Below are positions 23,882-51,554 of a stretch of 64,000 nucleotides of DNA, in pieces. The stretch lies in sequence record NC_055733.1; one strand, written 5' to 3'. The notes below the pieces were generated by a model. The model was not told the origin of the DNA and made no database searches. It worked only from the letters and a program-made list of their open reading frames with translations. The translations under genes were made by a program, and so were the position numbers. Each line of letters begins with the position of its first letter. The stretch's first letter is position 1.

Positions 23882-24226
23882 TTATAATGACTCTGGATTA
23901 CCAGTCAAGAAAAAATACGCGATTGCGATCAAAATTTTACACACAATATGAAGTGCTTGATCTTGATGTAATCCAATCTTGCTGTTGCACTTAGCATAAT
24001 CGATGATCCAATGACTCACAAGCTCTGCCAAACTAAGCCAAACGCTCTTGGTTGCAACGTATACCACAAGCGCATGAGTAGCACTATGAGCAGTTAGCCA
24101 GTAGAACCAATGCACCCCATAGAGCGGAGAATTGATTGGATTCTTACCACGAGCAATACTATCGGATTGCAGAACATAATCGGCCACAAAATGGCCGATT
24201 ATGAGAATATACAGAATTTCAAACAT
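23882..24226 (-). CDS. DUF3307-like membrane protein
   Basis: GHFVADYVLQ...H..TH...SHWIID..K...DQALH pattern with TM helices. Confidence 0.75.
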   Translation of the reverse strand: MFEILYILIIGHFVADYVLQSDSIARGKNPINSPLYGVHWFYWLTAHSATHALVVYVATKSVWLSLAELVSHWIIDYAKCNSKIGLHQDQALHIVCKILIAIAYFFLTGNPESL

Positions 24227-42271: not shown

Positions 42272-42841
42272 TTATGTGTGGGAATAAAATGGATGCAAAG
42301 TAGGAGCACTGCCATTAGATCCGGCAACGTAAGGACGTATTTCCACACCGTCTTTTTCTATGACAAATGACTTATACATAAACTGAACGGGAAGAACGAT
42401 CGGACTATTAATTTCGTCGGTGTATGTAAACTCTACCTCACCTAAATTTGACGGCCAAGCGTCAATGAACTTGAATGTTAGAACGATTTTCTTCTTGGAG
42501 TTATCCAGAACGTGAAGTAGCAAAGTTCTAGGAACAGTGCCTTCGATTTGTGCAGTGCTGTTTAGCTTTGCATAGTCTACTACAGATAACATCCACTTGT
42601 AAACTTCCACATATGCACTTAATTCCTCATCAAGCAACACACGTATGTTAAGCGGCTCGAAATCAACAACAGTGCCTGGAAGTTTACCAGTTGTCATTGG
42701 GTTAATTGGTATTTCAATGGGGTTAATATTGATTCCAGGGATACCCAATCCCTGGACTGCCATCTCAAACGCAATTGTACCTCCAGAGTCTGGAATATCC
42801 AGTCGGAAGTTCGTTACGTGTGCTGGGTTACTATGTATCAT
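42272..42841 (-). CDS. 3: Tail tube terminator/completion protein gp3
   Basis: TNFRLDIPD, IPGI, FEPL..RVLLDEEL..Y.EVYKWM and F..AWPS.L.E.EF. Confidence 0.9.
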   Translation of the reverse strand: MIHSNPAHVTNFRLDIPDSGGTIAFEMAVQGLGIPGININPIEIPINPMTTGKLPGTVVDFEPLNIRVLLDEELSAYVEVYKWMLSVVDYAKLNSTAQIEGTVPRTLLLHVLDNSKKKIVLTFKFIDAWPSNLGEVEFTYTDEINSPIVLPVQFMYKSFVIEKDGVEIRPYVAGSNGSAPTLHPFYSHT

Positions 42842-44691
42842 CGATTTTGCATCCCGTATGGTGTTGAGTTTGAATATCCGTGATCTGACGGGAATCCAAA
42901 TGAGCTTGTGTAAATGCTGGTATTGTTGTTGTTAACGTTACTCGTCATTGCCATTTGTGCTCGCATCGCCGTTGCGTCGCGTTGTCTATCTCGTTCTTTC
43001 TTTTCTGCCTCGGCTCGCTTCAAATTCTCTCCACTAGCTTCAACGGCAGCACTTTCTGGTGCCATACCACTTTGAATATTAGCAACAGGAGATAGTTTCT
43101 CTTTCAAAGCATCCCCGGCGCTGTTTACCATGTCAGAAACTTTACCGTCGGTAACATAGTCCGCAATATCGTAAAGATCGCTCAGTAGTAACGCGGTTCC
43201 GACAAACGGAATAAACTTAGTCGCAACTCTACCCACAACTTTAGCCGCTCCAGTCAATGCAGCTTTACCACCGATTTTTTCAAGGAAACCTTTTGTGCCC
43301 GCAGCAGCGGCTTTTTGTCCAGCTTTTCCTTCAATAGTCTCAGCAGCTTCACCAAGAGCTTTGCCAGATTTCATTTCAACATCAGGCGTTTTACCTGGCT
43401 CAATAGTCGGCTTAGGCTTACCGTTAATATCAACATCAACGTTTGGTCTAGGCTTACCCTTCGAATCAACATCTGGTTTTGGCTTTTTGCCGTCGGCGTC
43501 AACATCCGGTCTATGCTTTTTGCCGTCAACATCGATATCGGGCTTCGGCTTTTTAAATCCAGGGAAAGCTTTCTCAAACATTGAGCCAAGCGACGATTTA
43601 ATCGCAGACGCAAATTTAGCAGCTAATCCACCAAGAGTCGTGATCAATAATCCGAATCGCGAGAATAGTCCTGTACCAAGACTTGCTAATCCTCCAAGTA
43701 AGCCACCGAACATCTTCATGATGCCACCAATCAACAGCATTTTGCCCAGATCTTTCAGTGTGCTGATTAGTGTCTTGTGACGCTTGTCGTTTTCTCCTCG
43801 CTCTTTCCTATTCTCACCTCTCTCCTGACGCTGCTCTTGACTCTCTTTTTTGGATTGTTCTTCCGCATTAACATCTTCGCCAGTTTCAACTTCGCGAGAA
43901 GATTGGAATTTACTAATCTCTTTTTCTCTCAGTCGCTCAAATCTATTTTCCTTGAGCTTTTCAATTCCTCTACTACCAACGTCCTTGATAAATTTAGAAC
44001 CTTTACTAGCGACTGTATTCACCGCAGATCGAGCCATGCCGTATCCAGGAATATCTTTAAACACAGCAGATTCAACTCCACTGACCATTTGACTAAACGC
44101 ACCTGACGCCGTTTCATGAATAGTGGAAAGAGTATTCTTGACAAGGGATTCAGCGGACTTGCGAATAAATCCTTTATTTTCTTCTCGCTCCTGCTTGTCT
44201 GCTTTCTTCTTGTCCTCATACTCCTTGCGACTTGTTAAACCTTTCTCTTTCAGGAACTTTTTCAGCTCCGCATCAACGTCCGGTTTTGTTTCCGGCGTCG
44301 GTGATGGACTAGGTGCGTCTCCGGCTGGAATATCAGTCTGCGCGGCAGCATTAGCCGCTTGTTCAGAATATCGAATAATAGGACTCTGACTCGATATTTT
44401 ATTTTCCAACTCTGTTCTTCGCTGTAATGCCTTCTGATATTCGTCCTCAATTTGAGAACTATTTCGTTGAGCGTAGGCAACCGTGTCCATATATTCAGTG
44501 GCGCGTTCAGTTGCCTTTACTTTAGACGAAATAGACTTAACAAGCGAGTCCTCGGCTTTCGCAACGTCGAGACTAGAATCGGTAGTCATATCAAATGCCG
44601 TTTCCAGATCCCTCGCTTGTTTTCGGGTATCATCAAGTTGCACAGCGAGCTTTAAACTAGAGTCTTCCAGTATTTCGTTTGTTTCTTTCAC
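42838..44691 (-). CDS. 29: Tape-measure / baseplate hub protein gp29-like
   Basis: Helical Ala/Gly/Lys-rich protein with hydrophobic segments and P-D-V-D-x-x-G-K repeats (~43380-43560); next to 51/26. Confidence 0.7.
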   Translation of the reverse strand: MKETNEILEDSSLKLAVQLDDTRKQARDLETAFDMTTDSSLDVAKAEDSLVKSISSKVKATERATEYMDTVAYAQRNSSQIEDEYQKALQRRTELENKISSQSPIIRYSEQAANAAAQTDIPAGDAPSPSPTPETKPDVDAELKKFLKEKGLTSRKEYEDKKKADKQEREENKGFIRKSAESLVKNTLSTIHETASGAFSQMVSGVESAVFKDIPGYGMARSAVNTVASKGSKFIKDVGSRGIEKLKENRFERLREKEISKFQSSREVETGEDVNAEEQSKKESQEQRQERGENRKERGENDKRHKTLISTLKDLGKMLLIGGIMKMFGGLLGGLASLGTGLFSRFGLLITTLGGLAAKFASAIKSSLGSMFEKAFPGFKKPKPDIDVDGKKHRPDVDADGKKPKPDVDSKGKPRPNVDVDINGKPKPTIEPGKTPDVEMKSGKALGEAAETIEGKAGQKAAAAGTKGFLEKIGGKAALTGAAKVVGRVATKFIPFVGTALLLSDLYDIADYVTDGKVSDMVNSAGDALKEKLSPVANIQSGMAPESAAVEASGENLKRAEAEKKERDRQRDATAMRAQMAMTSNVNNNNTSIYTSSFGFPSDHGYSNSTPYGMQNR

Positions 44692-44852
44692 GACTCACTA
44701 GCCTCCTTAGCTCGTTTATTTCTGTCATTAATGAATAGAGTACGATATATGGCACGTTCGAAGGGAGTTGTAGTTTCCAACTCTTCAATCGACCAACCCT
44801 CTTTGTGCATTTCGTAATTTACGTTGAATAAATCGTAAACCGAATCATTCAC
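44688..44852 (-). CDS. 51: gp51-like C-terminal ORF (54 aa; not in the ORF track)
   Basis: Reads NDSVYDLFNVNYEMHKEGWSIEELETTTPFERAIY; it lies in the -1 frame of gene 26 and its stop overlaps the gp29 start (GTGA). Confidence 0.7.
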   Translation of the reverse strand: MNDSVYDLFNVNYEMHKEGWSIEELETTTPFERAIYRTLFINDRNKRAKEASES

Positions 44853-44857
44853 GAGGG

Positions 44858-45634
44858 TCAGTCGAAAAAATCGGATAGCCCTCTCAGTGTAACGGGTTCA
44901 GCATGTCCGCAATGAGGACATTTTACTGCCAAGTCAAGAGTCGTTTGTGGAATATCATTAACAAACTTAGCCATTTTCTCATAGCCGTCTTTGTCCAAAT
45001 AATCCAATAGTTCGATCAACTCTTCATGTTGAATATCTTCTCCGACTTTCATAACATCGCCGTTAAGATGAACTTCCTGAACACAACGCATAGTGATATC
45101 AAACAAATCGGATTCTTTTTCTACGTCAAAGAATTCAGATTCATATACAGTCGGATAACGCATCTTGATAGAAAGCTTATCGTTGATCTTAATCATACTT
45201 TCCGGGACTCTTGACAACTTCGCACGACGCAGATCCGCATTTACCTTGATCTGAGTTGAGCACTGACGTTTAGCCGGTTCATCGCCAATCATTACGGGAT
45301 TACCCTCTTCGTCCAAAGCGTCGATCATATTCTGACAAATAAACGACACAGGAACGACTGACGTACCCTTGGAGAGCTTCCACACTGCTAGATAGATAGT
45401 CTCTATGTCAAAGATCGGAAGCGTCTCCAAATCGATTCCAGACGTATCAATCACGCAGTTTTTCAGAATTTGGATCATAGCGTCTTCCATAGGAGAGCCA
45501 CTTTCATGAGCCAACATCAAAATTTTATATTCTTTCACCAAGAAAGCACGAACTCGAACTTTCTTTCCACTAGACAGCTTGACGCTCGATTGTTGAACAG
45601 CTTCAAGAAGCATGTCCCTTGTAAACTTTGCCAT
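44858..45634 (-). CDS. 26: Baseplate hub assembly protein gp26
   Basis: VRAFLVKEYK, MRYP, CPHCG...RGLSDFF; canonical TATAAATA late promoter at 45657..45664. Confidence 0.88.
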   Translation of the reverse strand: MAKFTRDMLLEAVQQSSVKLSSGKKVRVRAFLVKEYKILMLAHESGSPMEDAMIQILKNCVIDTSGIDLETLPIFDIETIYLAVWKLSKGTSVVPVSFICQNMIDALDEEGNPVMIGDEPAKRQCSTQIKVNADLRRAKLSRVPESMIKINDKLSIKMRYPTVYESEFFDVEKESDLFDITMRCVQEVHLNGDVMKVGEDIQHEELIELLDYLDKDGYEKMAKFVNDIPQTTLDLAVKCPHCGHAEPVTLRGLSDFFD

Positions 45635-45789
45635 TTAAAAACTCCTTATTTGTTCTTATTTATAGAAACGCTCGTAAACTTCACCAAACAACTGGTGAAG
45701 CGTTTCGACTCAATATGAGTATGAACGTATCAACTCACCAATGAATCGATTATAGAGCATTCCAACGAGATAGTAATCAAGTCGAGATA

Positions 45790-46118
45790 GTCGATAGACT
45801 GCGGCGTAGCCGCTAGATTGTTACTACCTTGTTATAAAAAGACAAAATAAAATCTCTTATAGATCTTTAATGAGAATCTATTTTGTCTTCTTCAATGAAA
45901 TCAATGAGTTAGCTCACTACGTTCGCAATCTTGCGATCATCGATTTCTGGAAGAGTATAGTATTTGAACTAATGTAAACCGTCGATAGACCGCGGCGTAG
46001 CCGCTCGCTATTTGATCAAAGACAAAATAAAATCTCTTATAAATCTTTAATGAGAATCTATTTTGTCTTCTTCAATGAAATCAATGAGTTAGCTCACTAC
46101 GTTCGCAATCTGACGATC
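45790..46118. repeat. Tandem copies 2 and 3 (180-bp period) of the palindromic element
   Basis: Cores AAAGACAAAATAAAATCTCTTAT...CTATTTTGTCTTC start at 45838 and 46018, each preceded by GCGGCGTAGCCGC and followed by AATCAATGAGTTAGCTCACTACGTTCGCAATCT. Confidence 0.92.
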
Positions 46119-46153
46119 AATGTTTACTGGATAGTATTGCAATCATATAATGA

Positions 46154-47141
46154 TTATGCATTCCTGATTCCACGTACCATTTGTTTAGTTCTGTTATAGA
46201 ACGACTCTACGGAGTTGATCAAGTTATCTTTACCGGCATGTTCAGCATGAATCATTGTGCTAACGGTAAATTCTACCTCGAACGTCGCTACCTGATTATT
46301 GTTTTCGTAATCCAGTTGAACTTCGCCAACTCGAACTGGAAAACACCCGTCACTATGAACAACGGAAGTCATTACTCCGCGTCTGTTTAAAGTCACGATA
46401 TCAATGTCCCGAGCGTAATTGCTATAAAAGCCGAATGTACCTTCTTGGATTATGAATCGAGTTCATCCAAGTTAGGAACCAAATACGTTCCGCGTAATCG
46501 GAAGAGCAATAGAATGTCATTCTGATCGGATCAACCGTTCTATTTCGAACTTCGGTAAACGGCTTTCTTTCGTTGTAGTTTGATTGTGTATCAAAGCTAA
46601 CACCAGGCAAGCTTACCGATTTTACCATAAGCGCCAGATCTCTGTTTACGTCATAATCAGACCCCAAGAATCCGTCAAGCAGTTCACCTGCACCCGGAAT
46701 CATTCTCACTAGAGTTGGGTCAATCGCGCCCATAATATTTTTGATCTTCGGACTCAATAACTTTTTGCCCTGATTCATCGCGATATCTTGAATACGATGC
46801 CAACTAAAATTTGTTCCTCCGAAGAATCCACCAGTTGATTTGTTAATCGCATCGCCAATTCCACCAATAGTCTCGCCCAGTGGACCCAAATGTCCCAAAA
46901 TGCCGTCAGCGGAAGCAACGGATTTAAAATCACCAAATCGAACAAGAAACGTATTCGATCTTGCTAAATCTTTATTTTCAATCACTCGCATAAAACGCGC
47001 AAAGTCCGGAGTAGAATTCGGATCATCTGCTAATTTATCCGCAATATAATCAATACCGTCAGATAATGCCGTACTCGCCATTCCAGGAATTTTACCCGGA
47101 ATCTCTTTAATATAATTCGCGGCTGTATCTAATAAGCCCAT
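46154..47141 (-). CDS. 54: Baseplate-tail tube initiator gp54 (frameshifted near 46440)
   Basis: KDLARSN.F.V, MVKSVSLPG, R.VDPIRMTF; continues in another frame as GTFGFYSNYARDIDI...FPVRVGEVQLDYE.NNQVATFEVEF. Confidence 0.85.
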
Positions 47142-48700: not shown

Positions 48701-49773
48701 ATGGCCAACAAAACAATCACTATGTTAAACAACGGTGTCAAGACGATTTCAGATGCCGCTGGTAAATTTATTGGTGAATTTCTTAGCTCGCCAAGTGGAG
48801 AGACAGGGATTCAAGCACTACAATATCCTCTCGCAATGAAGGGAGAGGCAGACAGACACAAGAACTACCTATGCTTTTATGCCGTTGATGCCGCCGCTCA
48901 AGGTTTGAGCAATGCAGATATTCAGACCCGAAGCTTGAATAGCGTTAGTGTAAGTTCAACGAGAAGACTATTGCCGTTATTCAGATGTATATGCCAAATC
49001 TTAATCAGAATATCGGTCACGAATACAGCGATAATGACGGTGGATTCTTGCAAGATATGATGATGAATTACGCTGGCTCTGCTGGCTCTGGACTTATTGA
49101 AACTGGTAAAGATCTGGGTGTGGCATTTGCGAAAACTGCGATTCAACAAGTAACTGTTAATTTGGGTAAAGCGACTCAACAATATAATGCGCAACTGAGT
49201 GGCAAGGTGTTGGGTAGCAGAAGCGCGAACATGTATAAAAATACATCTTTGCGATCACAGACGTTTCTATATAACTTGCGTCCAAAGAATCTGGCTGAAT
49301 TGAAAGAAGTTGGACAGATCATACGTGCGTTTCTGATTTATAGCTCTGCATCTGTTACAGGAACAACTTCTATCAACGAAATGGTGGGCAGTATTACTGG
49401 CGGATCAAACGCTCTTGGATCGATTGGTGCGGGTGGTGGTACTGAGAGTATCCAAGTTCTAAAAGTTCCTCCGCTGTGGTATCTTGAGGAGAGAGTTAAT
49501 AGCCAATCCGCATCGGCTGAAATCAGATACACTCCCAAGTTTGCAATGGGTCCGTGTGCGTTAACGAATATTAGAATCACAAGTACACCGGAACAGATTT
49601 ATAACTCATTCGAGGGAACAGCCGGTGACCCAATTGCTATTGATTTGGAACTAACATTCACCGAATTGCGTCCAGTGTTCAAAGAATATTGGGAAAGTCT
49701 GACAAAGAATTTGGGCTCACAAGATACCGGTCAATTCTTCTTTGGCTCATATGCAAGTAAGGAAAGCAAATAA
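48701..49773 (+). CDS. 48: Baseplate tail-tube cap gp48 (frameshifted near 48960)
   Basis: LQYP; R.Q.F..NLRPKN..E...V..II; P.L..IR...TP; IDLELTFTEL. The frames join as SST/EKTIAVIQMYMP. Confidence 0.82.
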
Positions 49774-50339
49774 TGTTGATGCAATTTTTTGACCCGATTA
49801 ACTACAACGGTATTCCAACTGCGAATATTTTTAAGAGTTACGGTAAGTATTTTAATGAAGTCGCTGGTAGTTTCGTATTGCGTCGTTATTTCGTGACGGG
49901 TGATCCCCGTCCTGAATTGCTGGCTCATAGACTTTATGGAAACAGTTCGTATTACTGGATTCTGTTGATGTTGAATAATATATATGATCCGTTTCATGGA
50001 TGGATTAAATCGCAGGAGCAAGTTTATAGCTCTGCCGCGCAAAAATATAAGAATCTACCAGACAAAGAAAACACGGTATTATATCATGTTGATTCTGACG
50101 GCAAACGATATTACCGAATGAAAGAGTTTCCTGTTGGATCAAAGAACTGGTATGATATTGGAGACACACTTCATCGATTTGTTCAGCACACGGGTGCGCT
50201 TGCTCCCGTTAGTGCGATTGAACATGAGTTGAATGAGAATGAAAACAAGAGAAACATTTTTATTTTGAGTCCGGCTGATTTGCAGACTTTTCTGGATATG
50301 TTGACTCGTAGAATGGAGAGAGTTCGTCGTGGCAGTTGA
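49773..50339 (+). CDS. 53: Baseplate wedge protein gp53 (LysM)
   Basis: RPELLAHRLYGNSSYYWILLMLNNIYDPFHGWIKS. Confidence 0.93.
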   Translation: MLMQFFDPINYNGIPTANIFKSYGKYFNEVAGSFVLRRYFVTGDPRPELLAHRLYGNSSYYWILLMLNNIYDPFHGWIKSQEQVYSSAAQKYKNLPDKENTVLYHVDSDGKRYYRMKEFPVGSKNWYDIGDTLHRFVQHTGALAPVSAIEHELNENENKRNIFILSPADLQTFLDMLTRRMERVRRGS

Positions 50340-51554
50340 CCGTATTAGTACCAACTCGCTTGAGAATTTCACGATTGAGCGAATTCTGGTAATGCAAGGT
50401 GAAAACGGATTTGAAGTCAGTGATGCGTTTTACTCAATCGAGATAAACGAGGGAATGACTAAGGGATTTATGACTGGTGTTCTTACGATTAAGAATGATG
50501 CTGATTTTCTCGATGTTGCTATGAATCCTAGAGGTGATGAATACATCGAGATCAGCTTTTATCACAAATACCCAGGTGGTGCTTCTGGTAAAAAGTTCAC
50601 CAAGCTATTCCGTGTTAACTCTTATAAAGAGTTTACCGACGCAAATACAATGAGTCGTGGTGTAATTGAATTCCATTTTGAGAGTGTTGGATCTATTGAT
50701 AACGAATTCGTTAGAGTTTCTAAGTCTTATTCCAACGTTGTACCCATGTTATTGTTGCTGATATGCTCAAACTTCTTGGATACAAAGACATTGATATGAA
50801 GATTGAGCCAACTCTTTATAACAAAGATATTGTTATTCCTAATTTGACTCCGATTGAAGTGATAGGACATCTTGTTAATCATTCTCAATCGGGTGATAGT
50901 ATTACGAAAGGAGATAGCAACTTTTATTTCTTTGAGAACAGGGATCAGATCAACTTTGTTAGTGGATCGAGTATTGTCAACACTGCTCCGGTTGCGACTT
51001 ATGTTTATAACATGACAAGCGATCAGAATTTCCAAGGAAAGGTAATCAAGTTTGTTCGAGATCGCGGATATAACTTGCGGGATCAGGCAAGAAACGGTGC
51101 TTTTGGTGTGACTGTTATTTCAAACAGTCTTGTTGATAAGAGTTATAGAGTTACTCCCTTGGAAGTTGAAAGTGTCAAAGCGGTATATAAGACTTTGAAT
51201 ACGGATAAGTGGTATGGAGGCACAGTTGGAAACAATCGTGATTCATGTATTCTTATGTCTAGTGAGGATCAGATGTATCAATATTTGAACATGGGTTCTA
51301 ACGGTAATAGCCTCGGTATTCAAAGAGTAAATAGATCAAACTTTAATGCCAAACGCGCATTCGCTCGTATTGGTGGAAATACCGACATTACAAGCGGAAG
51401 TGTTATCGACTTGAAAGTGCCGAGTATGAGTGGAAATAGCAATAACAGAGATAGCGGCAAGTGGATCGTTTTCTCTGTTCGTCACTTCCTAACTCGGGAG
51501 CAATATTTTATGGATCTTGAGTTAATGAGTGATTCCGATATTAGGAGAACTTAA
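50329..51554 (+). CDS. 27: Baseplate hub protein gp27-like (frameshifted near 50740)
   Basis: Between 53 and 5; FYFFENR..INF and SGKWIVFSVRH. The frames join as SNV/CTHVIVADMLK. Confidence 0.72.

What the first reader, a model, noticed from the sequence alone, without database searches (positions are those of the whole stretch)
44688..44880. Probable programmed -1 frameshift fusing gene 26 to a gene 51-like tail, directly before the tape measure gene
Seen: gene 26 ends GAT TTT TTC GAC TGA, which contains the slippery heptamer T-TTT-TTC (44864..44870). The -1 frame continues RLTLVNDSVYDLFNVNYEMHKEGWSIEELETTTPFERAIY... to a stop overlapping the gp29 start. The downstream GTG has no obvious RBS. 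Established: lambda-type tail assembly chaperones G/GT are made by -1 frameshifting just upstream of the tape measure gene. From memory, T4 gp26 also ends RGL..FF and T4 gp51 resembles gp26 plus a C-terminal ..P.ER.I segment. Inference: this phage makes gp26 and a gp51 equivalent from one locus, which would identify T4 gp26/gp51 as G/GT-type chaperones.
Basis: partly seen in the sequence, partly recalled or inferred. Interest (0 to 1): 0.75.

Follow-up and report, generated by a model that had tools for sequence, protein, structure and literature searches.

The report
Frameshift site in phage tail chaperone gene
Aeromonas phage Ah1 very probably makes a short and a long version of its gene 26 tail-assembly chaperone by a ribosomal slip just before the tail-length gene; the signal is real and strongly conserved, but this idea for T4-like phages was already published in 2022.

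Summary
The window is Aeromonas phage Ah1, a T4-like phage (100% identity). Gene 26 (44858-45634, minus strand) carries T_TTT_TTC in the slippery phase at 44864-44870, one codon before its stop. The -1 frame stays open for 58 codons and ends in a GTGA overlap with the 617-aa tape-measure-like gene.

- **Conservation:** the heptamer is invariant in 92 distinct relatives, while neighbouring synonymous sites are nearly saturated.
- **Frame switch:** codon-phase variation switches to the -1 frame exactly at the heptamer.
- **No shared start codon:** Ah1's GTG is GTC or GTT in sister phages, and in some lineages the first start codon lies 14-31 conserved codons downstream.
- **Link to T4:** the -1 piece aligns without a gap to residues 201-249 of T4 gp51. 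T4 gp51 is a gp26 paralogue plus this tail.
- **T4 contrast:** T4-type phages with a separate gene 51 encode the same Phe-Phe with non-slippery codons.
- **Stimulators:** cyanophage relatives also have an SD-like GAGG upstream and a covarying hairpin 5 nt downstream.

So a programmed -1 frameshift is well supported, though no product has been observed. Vladimirov, Gautam and Davidson (Virology 2022) already identified gp26/gp51 as the T4-like tail assembly chaperones. Novelty is therefore low. The Ah1 record simply lacks the annotation.

The parts
44858..45634 (-). Gene 26, the short chaperone form (TAC-N). 0-frame product of 258 aa.
   Evidence: PF12322 T4_baseplate, E 1e-55. phrog_150 positions 10-232 of 282. 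Annotated as gp26 in NC_055733. AlphaFold model pLDDT 85.5.
44864..44870 (-). Slippery heptamer T_TTT_TTC in X_XXY_YYZ phase, one codon before the 0-frame stop (44858-44860).
   Evidence: Read directly. Invariant in 92 distinct relatives, with zero entropy at three 0-frame third positions. Also present in Aeh1 and PX29, four metagenomic relatives and EniLVp02.
44879..44884 (-). Purine-rich AGAGGG, a possible Shine-Dalgarno-like stimulator 8 nt upstream of the heptamer.
   Evidence: Read directly. In the cyanophage clade the matching Glu codon is GAG in 73 sequences and GAA in 9, against a background of 32% GAG. The motif is variable in Ah1's own clade, so it is inconclusive for Ah1.
44688..44864 (-). 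-1 frame extension: 58 sense codons plus a TGA that overlaps the next gene's GTG. It is the equivalent of the C-terminal tail of T4 gp51. Not annotated in the Ah1 record.
   Evidence: phrog_634 (hub assembly catalyst), E 4.6e-14, positions 58-114 of 121. phrog_150 positions 236-280 of 282. Aligns to T4 gp51 residues 201-249 with no gap at the joint. tblastn finds it in 44 phage records.
44791..44863 (-). Predicted RNA structure starting right after the heptamer. An 11-bp closing stem holds two inner hairpins.
   Evidence: MFE -28.1 kcal/mol, z = -3.89, and 0 of 200 shuffles fold as well. The CCCUC/GAGGG core is shared with Aeh1, PX29, phiAS5 and Ahp1 but shows no covariation and is absent from CC2 and phage 65. 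Inconclusive.
42838..44691 (-). 617-aa tape-measure-like gene with a GTG start and AAGGAGG at 44702-44708.
   Evidence: phrog_11300, function unknown. No similarity to T4 gp29. The assignment rests on position between gene 26 and gene 3, a size close to T4 gp29 (590 aa), and a coiled-coil, Gly-rich hydrophobic make-up. No phrog_1283 homologue was found among the ten ORFs of the window's plus-strand baseplate cluster that were scanned.
42272..42841 (-). Gene 3, the tail tube terminator, the downstream neighbour.
   Evidence: phrog_45 and a weak PF06841 hit. Annotated as gp3.
46154..47141 (-). Gene 54, a tube-fold baseplate-tube initiator and the upstream neighbour. It is broken into two ORFs in this assembly.
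   Evidence: phrog_45 in two pieces. Annotated as 54_1 and 54_2. It is a single CDS in Aeh1. Frame-shifting 1-base indels relative to Aeh1.
45657..45664 (-). TATAAATA, matching the T4-type late promoter consensus (from established knowledge), 23 nt upstream of the gene 26 start.
   Evidence: It is the only copy in the 64-kb window.

Best explanation
Gene 26 of phage Ah1 encodes the short form of a tail assembly chaperone. A minority of ribosomes slip back one base on U_UUU_UUC (44870-44864), one codon before the stop, and then read 58 further codons in the -1 frame. This yields a long form with the same architecture as T4 gp51: a gp26-like body plus a tail of about 50-60 residues. The long form ends exactly where the tape-measure-like gene begins.

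Shown by sequence and comparison:
- the signal itself and its nucleotide-level conservation;
- the switch of coding phase at the heptamer;
- the homology and colinearity with T4 gp51.

Inferred:
- that the slip is ribosomal rather than transcriptional;
- its efficiency;
- that the two products act on the tape measure and tube proteins as lambda G and GT do.
For: **1. The heptamer is conserved as nucleotides.**
- In 92 distinct gp26 gene ends (Aeromonas, Vibrio, Cronobacter, Citrobacter, Pelagibacter phages and 80 cyanophage-like contigs), heptamer positions 0, 3 and 6 are 0-frame third positions with entropy 0. Flanking third positions have 1.4-1.75 bits.
- The codon before the heptamer encodes S, S, A, D or N but always ends in T (AGT 45, TCT 20, GCT 12, GAT 8, AAT 7).
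- The second Phe codon is TTC in 92 of 92, although TTC makes up only 25% of Phe codons in the same genes.

**2. The coding phase switches at the heptamer.**
- The first variable site after the heptamer (position 8, 1.67 bits) is a 0-frame second position and a -1-frame third position.
- Position 7 is G in 88 of 92, so the first -1 codon is CGN.

**3. No start codon is conserved.**
- Ah1's GTG is GTC in Aeh1 and GTT in PX29. PX29's annotated TTG is CTG in Ah1 and Aeh1.
- The first ATG, GTG or TTG lies at codon 31 in CC2, phage 65, ZPAH1 and L107, and at codon 14-18 in several others. The residues before it are conserved.
- Gene callers call nothing in this gap in four metagenomic relatives.

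**4. Homology to T4 gp51.**
- T4 gp51 matches phrog_150 over positions 13-280, T4 gp26 over 14-235, Ah1 gp26 over 10-232 and the Ah1 -1 piece over 236-280.
- The alignments place the last pre-slip residue and the first -1 residue on adjacent residues of T4 gp51, 200 and 201.

**5. Natural contrast.**
- T4 and Karamvirus vB_Ent31 have a separate gene 51. They encode the same Phe-Phe as TTC TTT or TTC TTC, and their -1 frame does not lead into a gp51-like tail (it closes within three codons in T4 and reads into the next gene in vB_Ent31).

**6. No fused form exists.**
- All 54 homologue clusters found are 224-259 aa long.

**7. Classical stimulators in the cyanophage clade.**
- An SD-like GAGG lies about 9 nt upstream, with a synonymous-site bias of 73:9 against a 32% background.
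- An 11-bp hairpin lies 5 nt downstream. It is 81.5% paired, against 27-48% for slid controls. Seven of 11 pairs show compensatory changes, and 0 of 500 shuffles reach the observed score.

**8. Genomic context.**
- A tube-fold gene 54 lies upstream. The tape-measure-like gene lies immediately downstream with a GTGA overlap, followed by gene 3.

**9. Published view.**
- Leiman et al. 2010 (PMC3004832) list gp26 and gp51 as hub assembly chaperones.
- Two papers citing Vladimirov et al. 2022 describe the T4-like chaperone pair and poly-T slip sites.
Against: - No protein, ribosome-profiling or transcript data for Ah1 or any relative were available, so the long product is inferred.
- Ah1's own stimulators are unproven. 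The upstream purine motif varies within its clade, and the downstream fold (z = -3.9) shows no covariation.
- The tape-measure identity of the 617-aa ORF is positional only.
- The Foldseek match of the gp26 model to the solved HK97 tail assembly chaperone (2ob9) is not significant: E 0.59, probability 0.75, 67 columns, TM 0.41 normalised to the target.
- In 57 of 93 relatives an ATG lies 3 codons after the slip. Independent or re-initiated translation of a small protein could therefore co-exist with frameshifting there.
Confidence: 0.85

Rival explanations
1. The small ORF is a separate gene, as annotated ('gp51' or hub assembly catalyst) in PX29, phiAS5, KVP40 and the cyanophages. It would be translated from its own start codon or by re-initiation after ribosomes terminate at the gene 26 stop. 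No fusion protein would be made.
For: - In Ah1 a GTG lies 6 nt after the stop.
- Several GenBank records annotate a separate small gene.
- 57 of 93 relatives have an ATG three codons after the slip site.
- The close stop-start spacing would suit translational coupling.
Against: - The start codon is not conserved. Ah1's GTG is GTC or GTT in sister phages.
- There is no SD before it.
- In several lineages the first start codon lies 14-31 codons inside a conserved peptide.
- This reading does not explain the invariant T, T and C at synonymous sites, or the phase switch at the heptamer.
- In cyanophages the ATG sits inside the 5' arm of the conserved hairpin.
Confidence: 0.06
2. The long form is made by transcriptional slippage. 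RNA polymerase would add one U in the run of six, giving an mRNA that encodes the same long protein without any ribosomal slip.
For: - The site is a homopolymer run.
- The protein product would be identical.
Against: - From established knowledge, six U's are short for efficient polymerase slippage.
- The run always lies in the X_XXY_YYZ phase.
- It is flanked in the largest clade by an SD-like element and a covarying hairpin at the distances known to stimulate ribosomal -1 slips.
Confidence: 0.06
3. The frame change is an assembly or sequencing error in a T run, or a recent mutation, and the real gene is one continuous ORF.
For: At least one other essential tail gene in the Ah1 record (gene 54), and apparently two more (the gp27-like gene and gene 48), are split. 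The assembly may therefore carry indel errors.
Against: - The same two-frame layout, heptamer and stop position recur in about 100 independent genomes and contigs.
- None of the 54 homologue clusters is a fused protein.
Confidence: 0.01

Closest known systems
T4 gp26 and gp51, identified as the tail assembly chaperone pair of T4-like phages (Vladimirov, Gautam and Davidson, Virology 2022; paper not readable here)
   Same: Ah1 gp26 belongs to the same families (PF12322, phrog_150). The -1 piece matches the gp51 family phrog_634 and aligns to T4 gp51 residues 201-249. The Ah1 body plus tail is colinear with T4 gp51.
   Different: T4 and other Tevenvirinae make the long form from a separate gene 51, placed before genes 27-28-29. 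Their gene 26 has non-slippery Phe codons, and its -1 frame does not lead into a gp51-like tail. Ah1 has one locus with two frames.
Lambda gpG/gpGT and the conserved tail-chaperone frameshift of long-tailed phages (Xu, Hendrix and Duda, Mol Cell 2004; from my knowledge and the reference lists seen)
   Same: Two products share an N-terminus. The -1 slip occurs on an X_XXY_YYZ heptamer near the end of the first ORF. The locus lies immediately before the tape-measure gene and after a tube-type gene.
   Different: There is no sequence similarity, and only a non-significant fold hit to the solved HK97 chaperone. gp26 is larger (258 aa) and carries a CxxC pair near its C-terminus plus two upstream cysteines. 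The added tail is short (58 aa).
E. coli dnaX -1 frameshift signal: upstream SD-like element, heptamer and downstream hairpin (from established knowledge)
   Same: The cyanophage relatives show all three parts at comparable spacings, with selection visible at synonymous sites and covariation in the stem.
   Different: In dnaX the shift truncates the protein. Here it extends the protein. In Ah1 itself only the heptamer is secure.
The small 'gp51' or 'baseplate hub assembly catalyst' ORFs annotated after gene 26 in KVP40, cyanophages, PX29 and phiAS5
   Same: They occupy the same locus and are homologous. The KVP40 record already notes similarity to the C-terminal 40 residues of T4 gp51.
   Different: Those records treat it as an independent gene, with start codons that differ from phage to phage. 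The Ah1, Aeh1, CC2, S13 and ZPAH1 records annotate nothing there.

Membership tests
Tail assembly chaperone pair made by -1 frameshift (lambda G/GT type; TAC-N and TAC-NC) | The second ORF overlaps the end of the first, lies in the -1 frame, and has no start codon of its own. | tested here: met
   The -1 frame is open across the stop. Candidate start codons are not conserved and lie up to 31 codons downstream in relatives.
Tail assembly chaperone pair made by -1 frameshift (lambda G/GT type; TAC-N and TAC-NC) | A conserved X_XXY_YYZ slippery heptamer in phase near the end of the first ORF. | tested here: met
   T_TTT_TTC is invariant in 92 distinct relatives at synonymous sites. T_TTT_TTT occurs in phiN3 and nACB2.
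Tail assembly chaperone pair made by -1 frameshift (lambda G/GT type; TAC-N and TAC-NC) | Location immediately upstream of the tape-measure gene and downstream of a tube-type gene. | tested here: inconclusive
   The gene order 54 (tube fold), 26, 617-aa ORF, 3 is conserved. The 617-aa ORF is tape-measure-like only by position, size and composition. It has no similarity to T4 gp29.
Tail assembly chaperone pair made by -1 frameshift (lambda G/GT type; TAC-N and TAC-NC) | The fold of the short form resembles solved tail assembly chaperones. | tested here: inconclusive
   For the AlphaFold model (pLDDT 85.5), the only Foldseek PDB hit with notable probability is the HK97 chaperone 2ob9: probability 0.75, E 0.59, 67 columns. 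No sequence hit to any solved structure.
Tail assembly chaperone pair made by -1 frameshift (lambda G/GT type; TAC-N and TAC-NC) | Both products are made, the long form in minor amount. Both are needed for tail assembly and are absent from virions. | not testable with these tools
   No expression or proteome data are available. For T4, Leiman et al. 2010 list gp26 and gp51 as assembly chaperones and state that gp51 is absent from the particle.
T4 gp26 family (Pfam PF12322 T4_baseplate; phrog_150) | A significant full-length match to the family profile. | tested here: met
   PF12322 at 189 bits against a cut-off of 24.5. phrog_150 at E 1e-60. BFVD fold matches to gp26 proteins of many myoviruses.
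T4 gp51 family (hub assembly catalyst; phrog_634) | A gp26-like body followed by the conserved C-terminal tail. | tested here: met
   The tail matches phrog_634 at E 4.6e-14. T4 gp51 covers both parts of phrog_150. The joint is colinear. In Ah1 this architecture exists only if the frames are read together, which was inferred and not observed.
dnaX-type three-part -1 frameshift signal | An SD-like element upstream and a stable stem-loop 5-9 nt downstream of the heptamer. | tested here: inconclusive
   Met in the cyanophage clade. In Ah1, AGAGGG lies 8 nt upstream and a fold with z = -3.9 begins right after the heptamer, but neither is supported by variation within its clade.

The most novel reading that the evidence does not exclude
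The one-locus frameshift layout, with an upstream SD-like element, T_TTT_TTC (or T_TTT_TTT) and a downstream hairpin, may be the ancestral state for the whole T4 supergroup (Kyanoviridae, non-Teven Straboviridae, Emdodecavirus, Ackermannviridae). The two-gene 26 + 51 layout of T4 would then be a derived replacement in Tevenvirinae. In cyanophages the hairpin that encloses the annotated ATG might allow two modes of expression: a fusion by slip and a free tail peptide by re-initiation. This would count as new only if the 2022 paper, which I could not read, did not already describe this distribution and these signals.
Probability: 0.25. Interest if true: 0.45.

Novelty: already known. Interest (0 to 1): 0.3.

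Why it matters
- **Annotation:** Ah1, Aeh1, CC2, S13 and ZPAH1 annotate nothing in this gap. Other records call a free-standing 'gp51' with arbitrary start codons. The locus should be annotated as one gene with a -1 frameshift.
- **Biology:** the result ties the long-puzzling T4 hub 'catalyst' gp51 to the universal tail-chaperone frameshift. It also shows a clean natural contrast: a slippery site is kept where there is one locus and lost where the gene is duplicated.
- **Limit:** because the main idea is published, the value here is confirmation and detail, not discovery.

Tried and rejected
- **Locus search with the full alignment:** The search for related loci with the 11-sequence alignment failed because no block was conserved enough. 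Clade-specific alignments worked. The Aeromonas-type search only re-found known isolates.
- **Consensus RNA folding:** RNAalifold on the 81-sequence alignment predicted no consensus structure. The hairpin was then read from the alignment and tested with the count of structure pairs.
- **Direct pairwise comparison:** BLASTP of T4 gp51 against the 58-aa piece is not significant. The link rests on profiles and multiple alignment.
- **Solved structures:** a profile search found nothing for the gp26 family.
- **Tape-measure identity:** BLASTP of the 617-aa ORF against T4 gp29, and PHROG scans of the equivalent ORFs in relatives, gave no link to the gp29 family.
- **A second frameshift candidate:** the other in-phase T_TTT_TTC at 23909-23915 was rejected because its -1 frame stops after 3 codons.
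- **Literature:** four searches for gp26, gp51 and frameshift found nothing relevant. The prior work surfaced only through the PRFect paper. The 2022 paper itself is not held.
Full report
**Identity of the window.** The region is 100% identical to Aeromonas phage Ah1 (NC_055733/MG250483; Straboviridae, Cinqassovirus). Window coordinate equals record coordinate minus 62000. On the minus strand the gene order is 4, 2, 54, 26, an unannotated gap, a 617-aa 'hypothetical protein', 3, 1.

**The observation.** One search shows gene 26 (44858-45634) ending GAT TTT TTC GAC TGA.
- T_TTT_TTC lies at 44870-44864 in the X_XXY_YYZ phase, one codon before the stop.
- The -1 frame read from 44864 runs 58 codons. 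Its TGA (44690-44688) overlaps the GTG start (44691-44689) of the 617-aa ORF.
- That ORF has a strong AAGGAGG at 44702-44708. The GTG at 44852 has no such motif before it.

The heptamer alone is not beyond chance. TTTTTTC is in fact depleted in the window, with 11 copies against 32 +/- 6 expected. One other in-phase copy, at 23909-23915, leads nowhere.

**What the two pieces are.**
- The 0-frame product is a clear gp26 (PF12322, E 1e-55; phrog_150 positions 10-232 of 282).
- The -1 piece matches phrog_634 'baseplate hub assembly catalyst' (E 4.6e-14) and, more weakly, phrog_150 positions 236-280, exactly where the gp26 match stops.
- On a T4 record returned by the tools (OZ209023.1), gp51 (249 aa) covers phrog_150 positions 13-280 and phrog_634. 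T4 gp26 (208 aa) covers only positions 14-235.
- In multiple alignments the C-terminus of Ah1 gp26 aligns up to T4 gp51 residue 200. The -1 pieces of eight phages start at residue 201, with no gap.

So T4 gp51 is a gp26 paralogue with a C-terminal tail, and in Ah1 the tail lies in the -1 frame. I kept the two pieces separate in every tool call, script and note.

**Conservation of the slip site.**
- tblastn with the -1 piece finds it in 44 phage records from several Aeromonas phage genera, Cronobacter, Citrobacter, Pelagibacter phage Mosig and cyanophages.
- In nine of the ten relatives first read, gene 26 ends xxT TTT TTC GNN stop. Mosig keeps the heptamer in phase, but its 0-frame runs 8 more codons. 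KVP40 and P-SSM2 show the standard ending.
- With 80 further cyanophage-like IMG/VR contigs, 93 of 95 loci carry the heptamer in phase, and in 92 the stop lies exactly one codon later.
- Over 92 distinct neighbourhoods, the three heptamer positions that are 0-frame third positions have zero entropy. Flanking third positions have 1.4-1.75 bits.
- The preceding codon is AGT, TCT, GCT, GAT or AAT, which is four different amino acids (Ser from two codon families), always T-ending. The second Phe codon is always TTC, although TTC is only 25% of Phe codons in these genes.
- Aeh1 and PX29, four metagenomic relatives at 46-62% protein identity and Vibrio phage EniLVp02 behave the same way.

**The -1 frame is decoded from the heptamer onward.**
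- The first variable site after the heptamer is a 0-frame second position but a -1-frame third position.
- The base before it is G in 88 of 92, so the first -1 codon is always CGN.
- The 3-nt periodicity of variation then stays in the -1 phase.

**No start codon is shared.**
- Ah1's GTG is GTC in Aeh1 and GTT in PX29, both synonymous in the -1 frame. PX29's annotated TTG is CTG in Ah1 and Aeh1.
- The first ATG, GTG or TTG is at codon 31 in CC2, phage 65, ZPAH1 and L107, and at codon 14-18 in S13, Ci1, phiAS5, L108 and L110. The peptide before it is conserved.
- None of 54 homologue clusters in a 5.8-billion-protein collection is a fused protein of about 315 aa.

**Natural contrast.** T4 and Karamvirus vB_Ent31 carry a separate, divergently placed gene 51. 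They encode the same Phe-Phe as TTC TTT or TTC TTC, and their -1 frame does not lead into a gp51-like tail (it closes within three codons in T4 and reads into the next gene in vB_Ent31). Sinorhizobium phage phiN3 and Acinetobacter phage nACB2 have T_TTT_TTT in phase with an open, homologous -1 frame. Kuttervirus PhiSH19 has G_ATT_TTC, also with an open -1 frame.

**Stimulatory elements.**
- In the cyanophage clade, the Glu codon at -14..-12 is GAG in 73 sequences and GAA in 9, against 32% GAG in the same genes. This gives GAGG about 9 nt upstream.
- An 11-bp hairpin lies 5 nt downstream (alignment columns 33-43 paired with 53-63). It is 81.5% paired, against 27-48% for slid controls. Seven of 11 pairs have compensatory changes, and no shuffle of 500 reaches the observed score.
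- The ATG annotated as the 'gp51' start lies inside the 5' arm of this hairpin.
- In Ah1, AGAGGG lies 8 nt upstream (44879-44884). The 89 nt after the heptamer fold with z = -3.89.
- The upstream motif varies in Ah1's clade. The downstream stem shows no covariation and is missing in CC2 and phage 65. These remain open for Ah1.

**Chaperone role and the tape measure.**
- Leiman et al. 2010 list gp26 and gp51 as hub assembly chaperones and note that gp51 is absent from particles.
- The 617-aa ORF shows no similarity to T4 gp29, and its PHROG has no function.
- Calling it the tape measure rests on three things: its conserved place between gene 26 and gene 3, a size close to gp29, and the absence of a gp29-family gene among the ten ORFs of the window's plus-strand baseplate cluster that were scanned.
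- An AlphaFold model of Ah1 gp26 is confident (pLDDT 85.5). It matches gp26 homologues of many large myoviruses in BFVD.
- Against the PDB, the only hit with notable probability is the HK97 tail assembly chaperone 2ob9. It is not significant (E 0.59).

**Prior work.**
- The PRFect paper (PMC10885494) cites Vladimirov, Gautam and Davidson, Virology 2022, for T4-like phages that carry a short chaperone gene and a long fusion gene instead of a frameshift.
- PMC12846349 cites the same paper for poly-T slip signals in TAC-N genes of T4-like phages.
- The KVP40 record already notes that the small ORF resembles the C-terminus of T4 gp51.
- The 2022 paper is not held. I know it only from its title and these citations.
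The Ah1 record merely lacks the annotation.

**Verdict.** This is a real, strongly conserved programmed -1 frameshift site in the gene 26 tail-chaperone gene, with confidence 0.85. The product is inferred, not observed. Novelty is low.

Noticed in passing
window 46154-47141 (-): Gene 54 is split into two ORFs in Ah1 (annotated 54_1 and 54_2) but is one CDS in Aeh1. My alignment to Aeh1 shows four 1-base indels, two in-frame indels and no premature in-register stop. This could be a sequencing error or real decay.
   Followed up: partly
window 50329-51554 (+) and 48701-49773 (+): Two more tail genes look split. The gp27-like gene (phrog_350) is in two overlapping ORFs covering profile positions 6-131 and 142-430. 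The annotated gp48 ORF covers only the C-terminal half of phrog_230 and is about 96 aa shorter than in Aeh1. Several breaks in essential genes suggest indel errors in this assembly.
   Followed up: no
window 45790-46131: A unit of about 180-190 bp is repeated twice between gene 26 and gene 54: a 25-nt copy pair at 96% identity and a 114-nt copy pair at 94%. Function unknown.
   Followed up: no
window 45657-45664 (-): The only TATAAATA in the 64-kb window (3.3 expected) lies 23 nt before the gene 26 start. This fits a T4-type late promoter for the operon of gene 26, the tape-measure-like gene and gene 3.
   Followed up: no
whole window: TTTTTTC is three-fold depleted: 11 copies against 32 +/- 6 in shuffles. 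Only three copies lie on the minus strand, where the genes of the first 48 kb lie, which is consistent with avoidance of slippery runs.
   Followed up: partly
L113 (phiN3), L112 (nACB2), L017 (PhiSH19): Slip-site variants occur. phiN3 and nACB2 have T_TTT_TTT in phase. Kuttervirus PhiSH19 has G_ATT_TTC, which is not a canonical heptamer. All three have an open -1 frame carrying the gp51-like P-[FW]-[EH] motif.
   Followed up: partly
L008 (Pelagibacter phage Mosig) 2495-2530: Mosig keeps the heptamer, but its 0-frame runs 8 more codons before the stop. It is the only exception to the 'one codon, then stop' rule among the 93 loci that carry the heptamer.
   Followed up: no
alignment A4, columns 33-63 (cyanophage-like loci L016-L097): The ATG annotated as the 'gp51' start in cyanophages lies inside the 5' arm of the conserved hairpin, 2-5 nt after the gene 26 stop. 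The hairpin could both stimulate slipping and gate re-initiation.
   Followed up: partly
window 45335-45340 and 44900-44920 (-), protein residues about 100-125 and 239-242: gp26 homologues keep a CxxC pair near the C-terminus and two upstream cysteines (C100 nearly invariant). This suggests a zinc-binding site, which is not a known feature of lambda-type tail chaperones. The cyanophage forms lack the CxxC pair.
   Followed up: no
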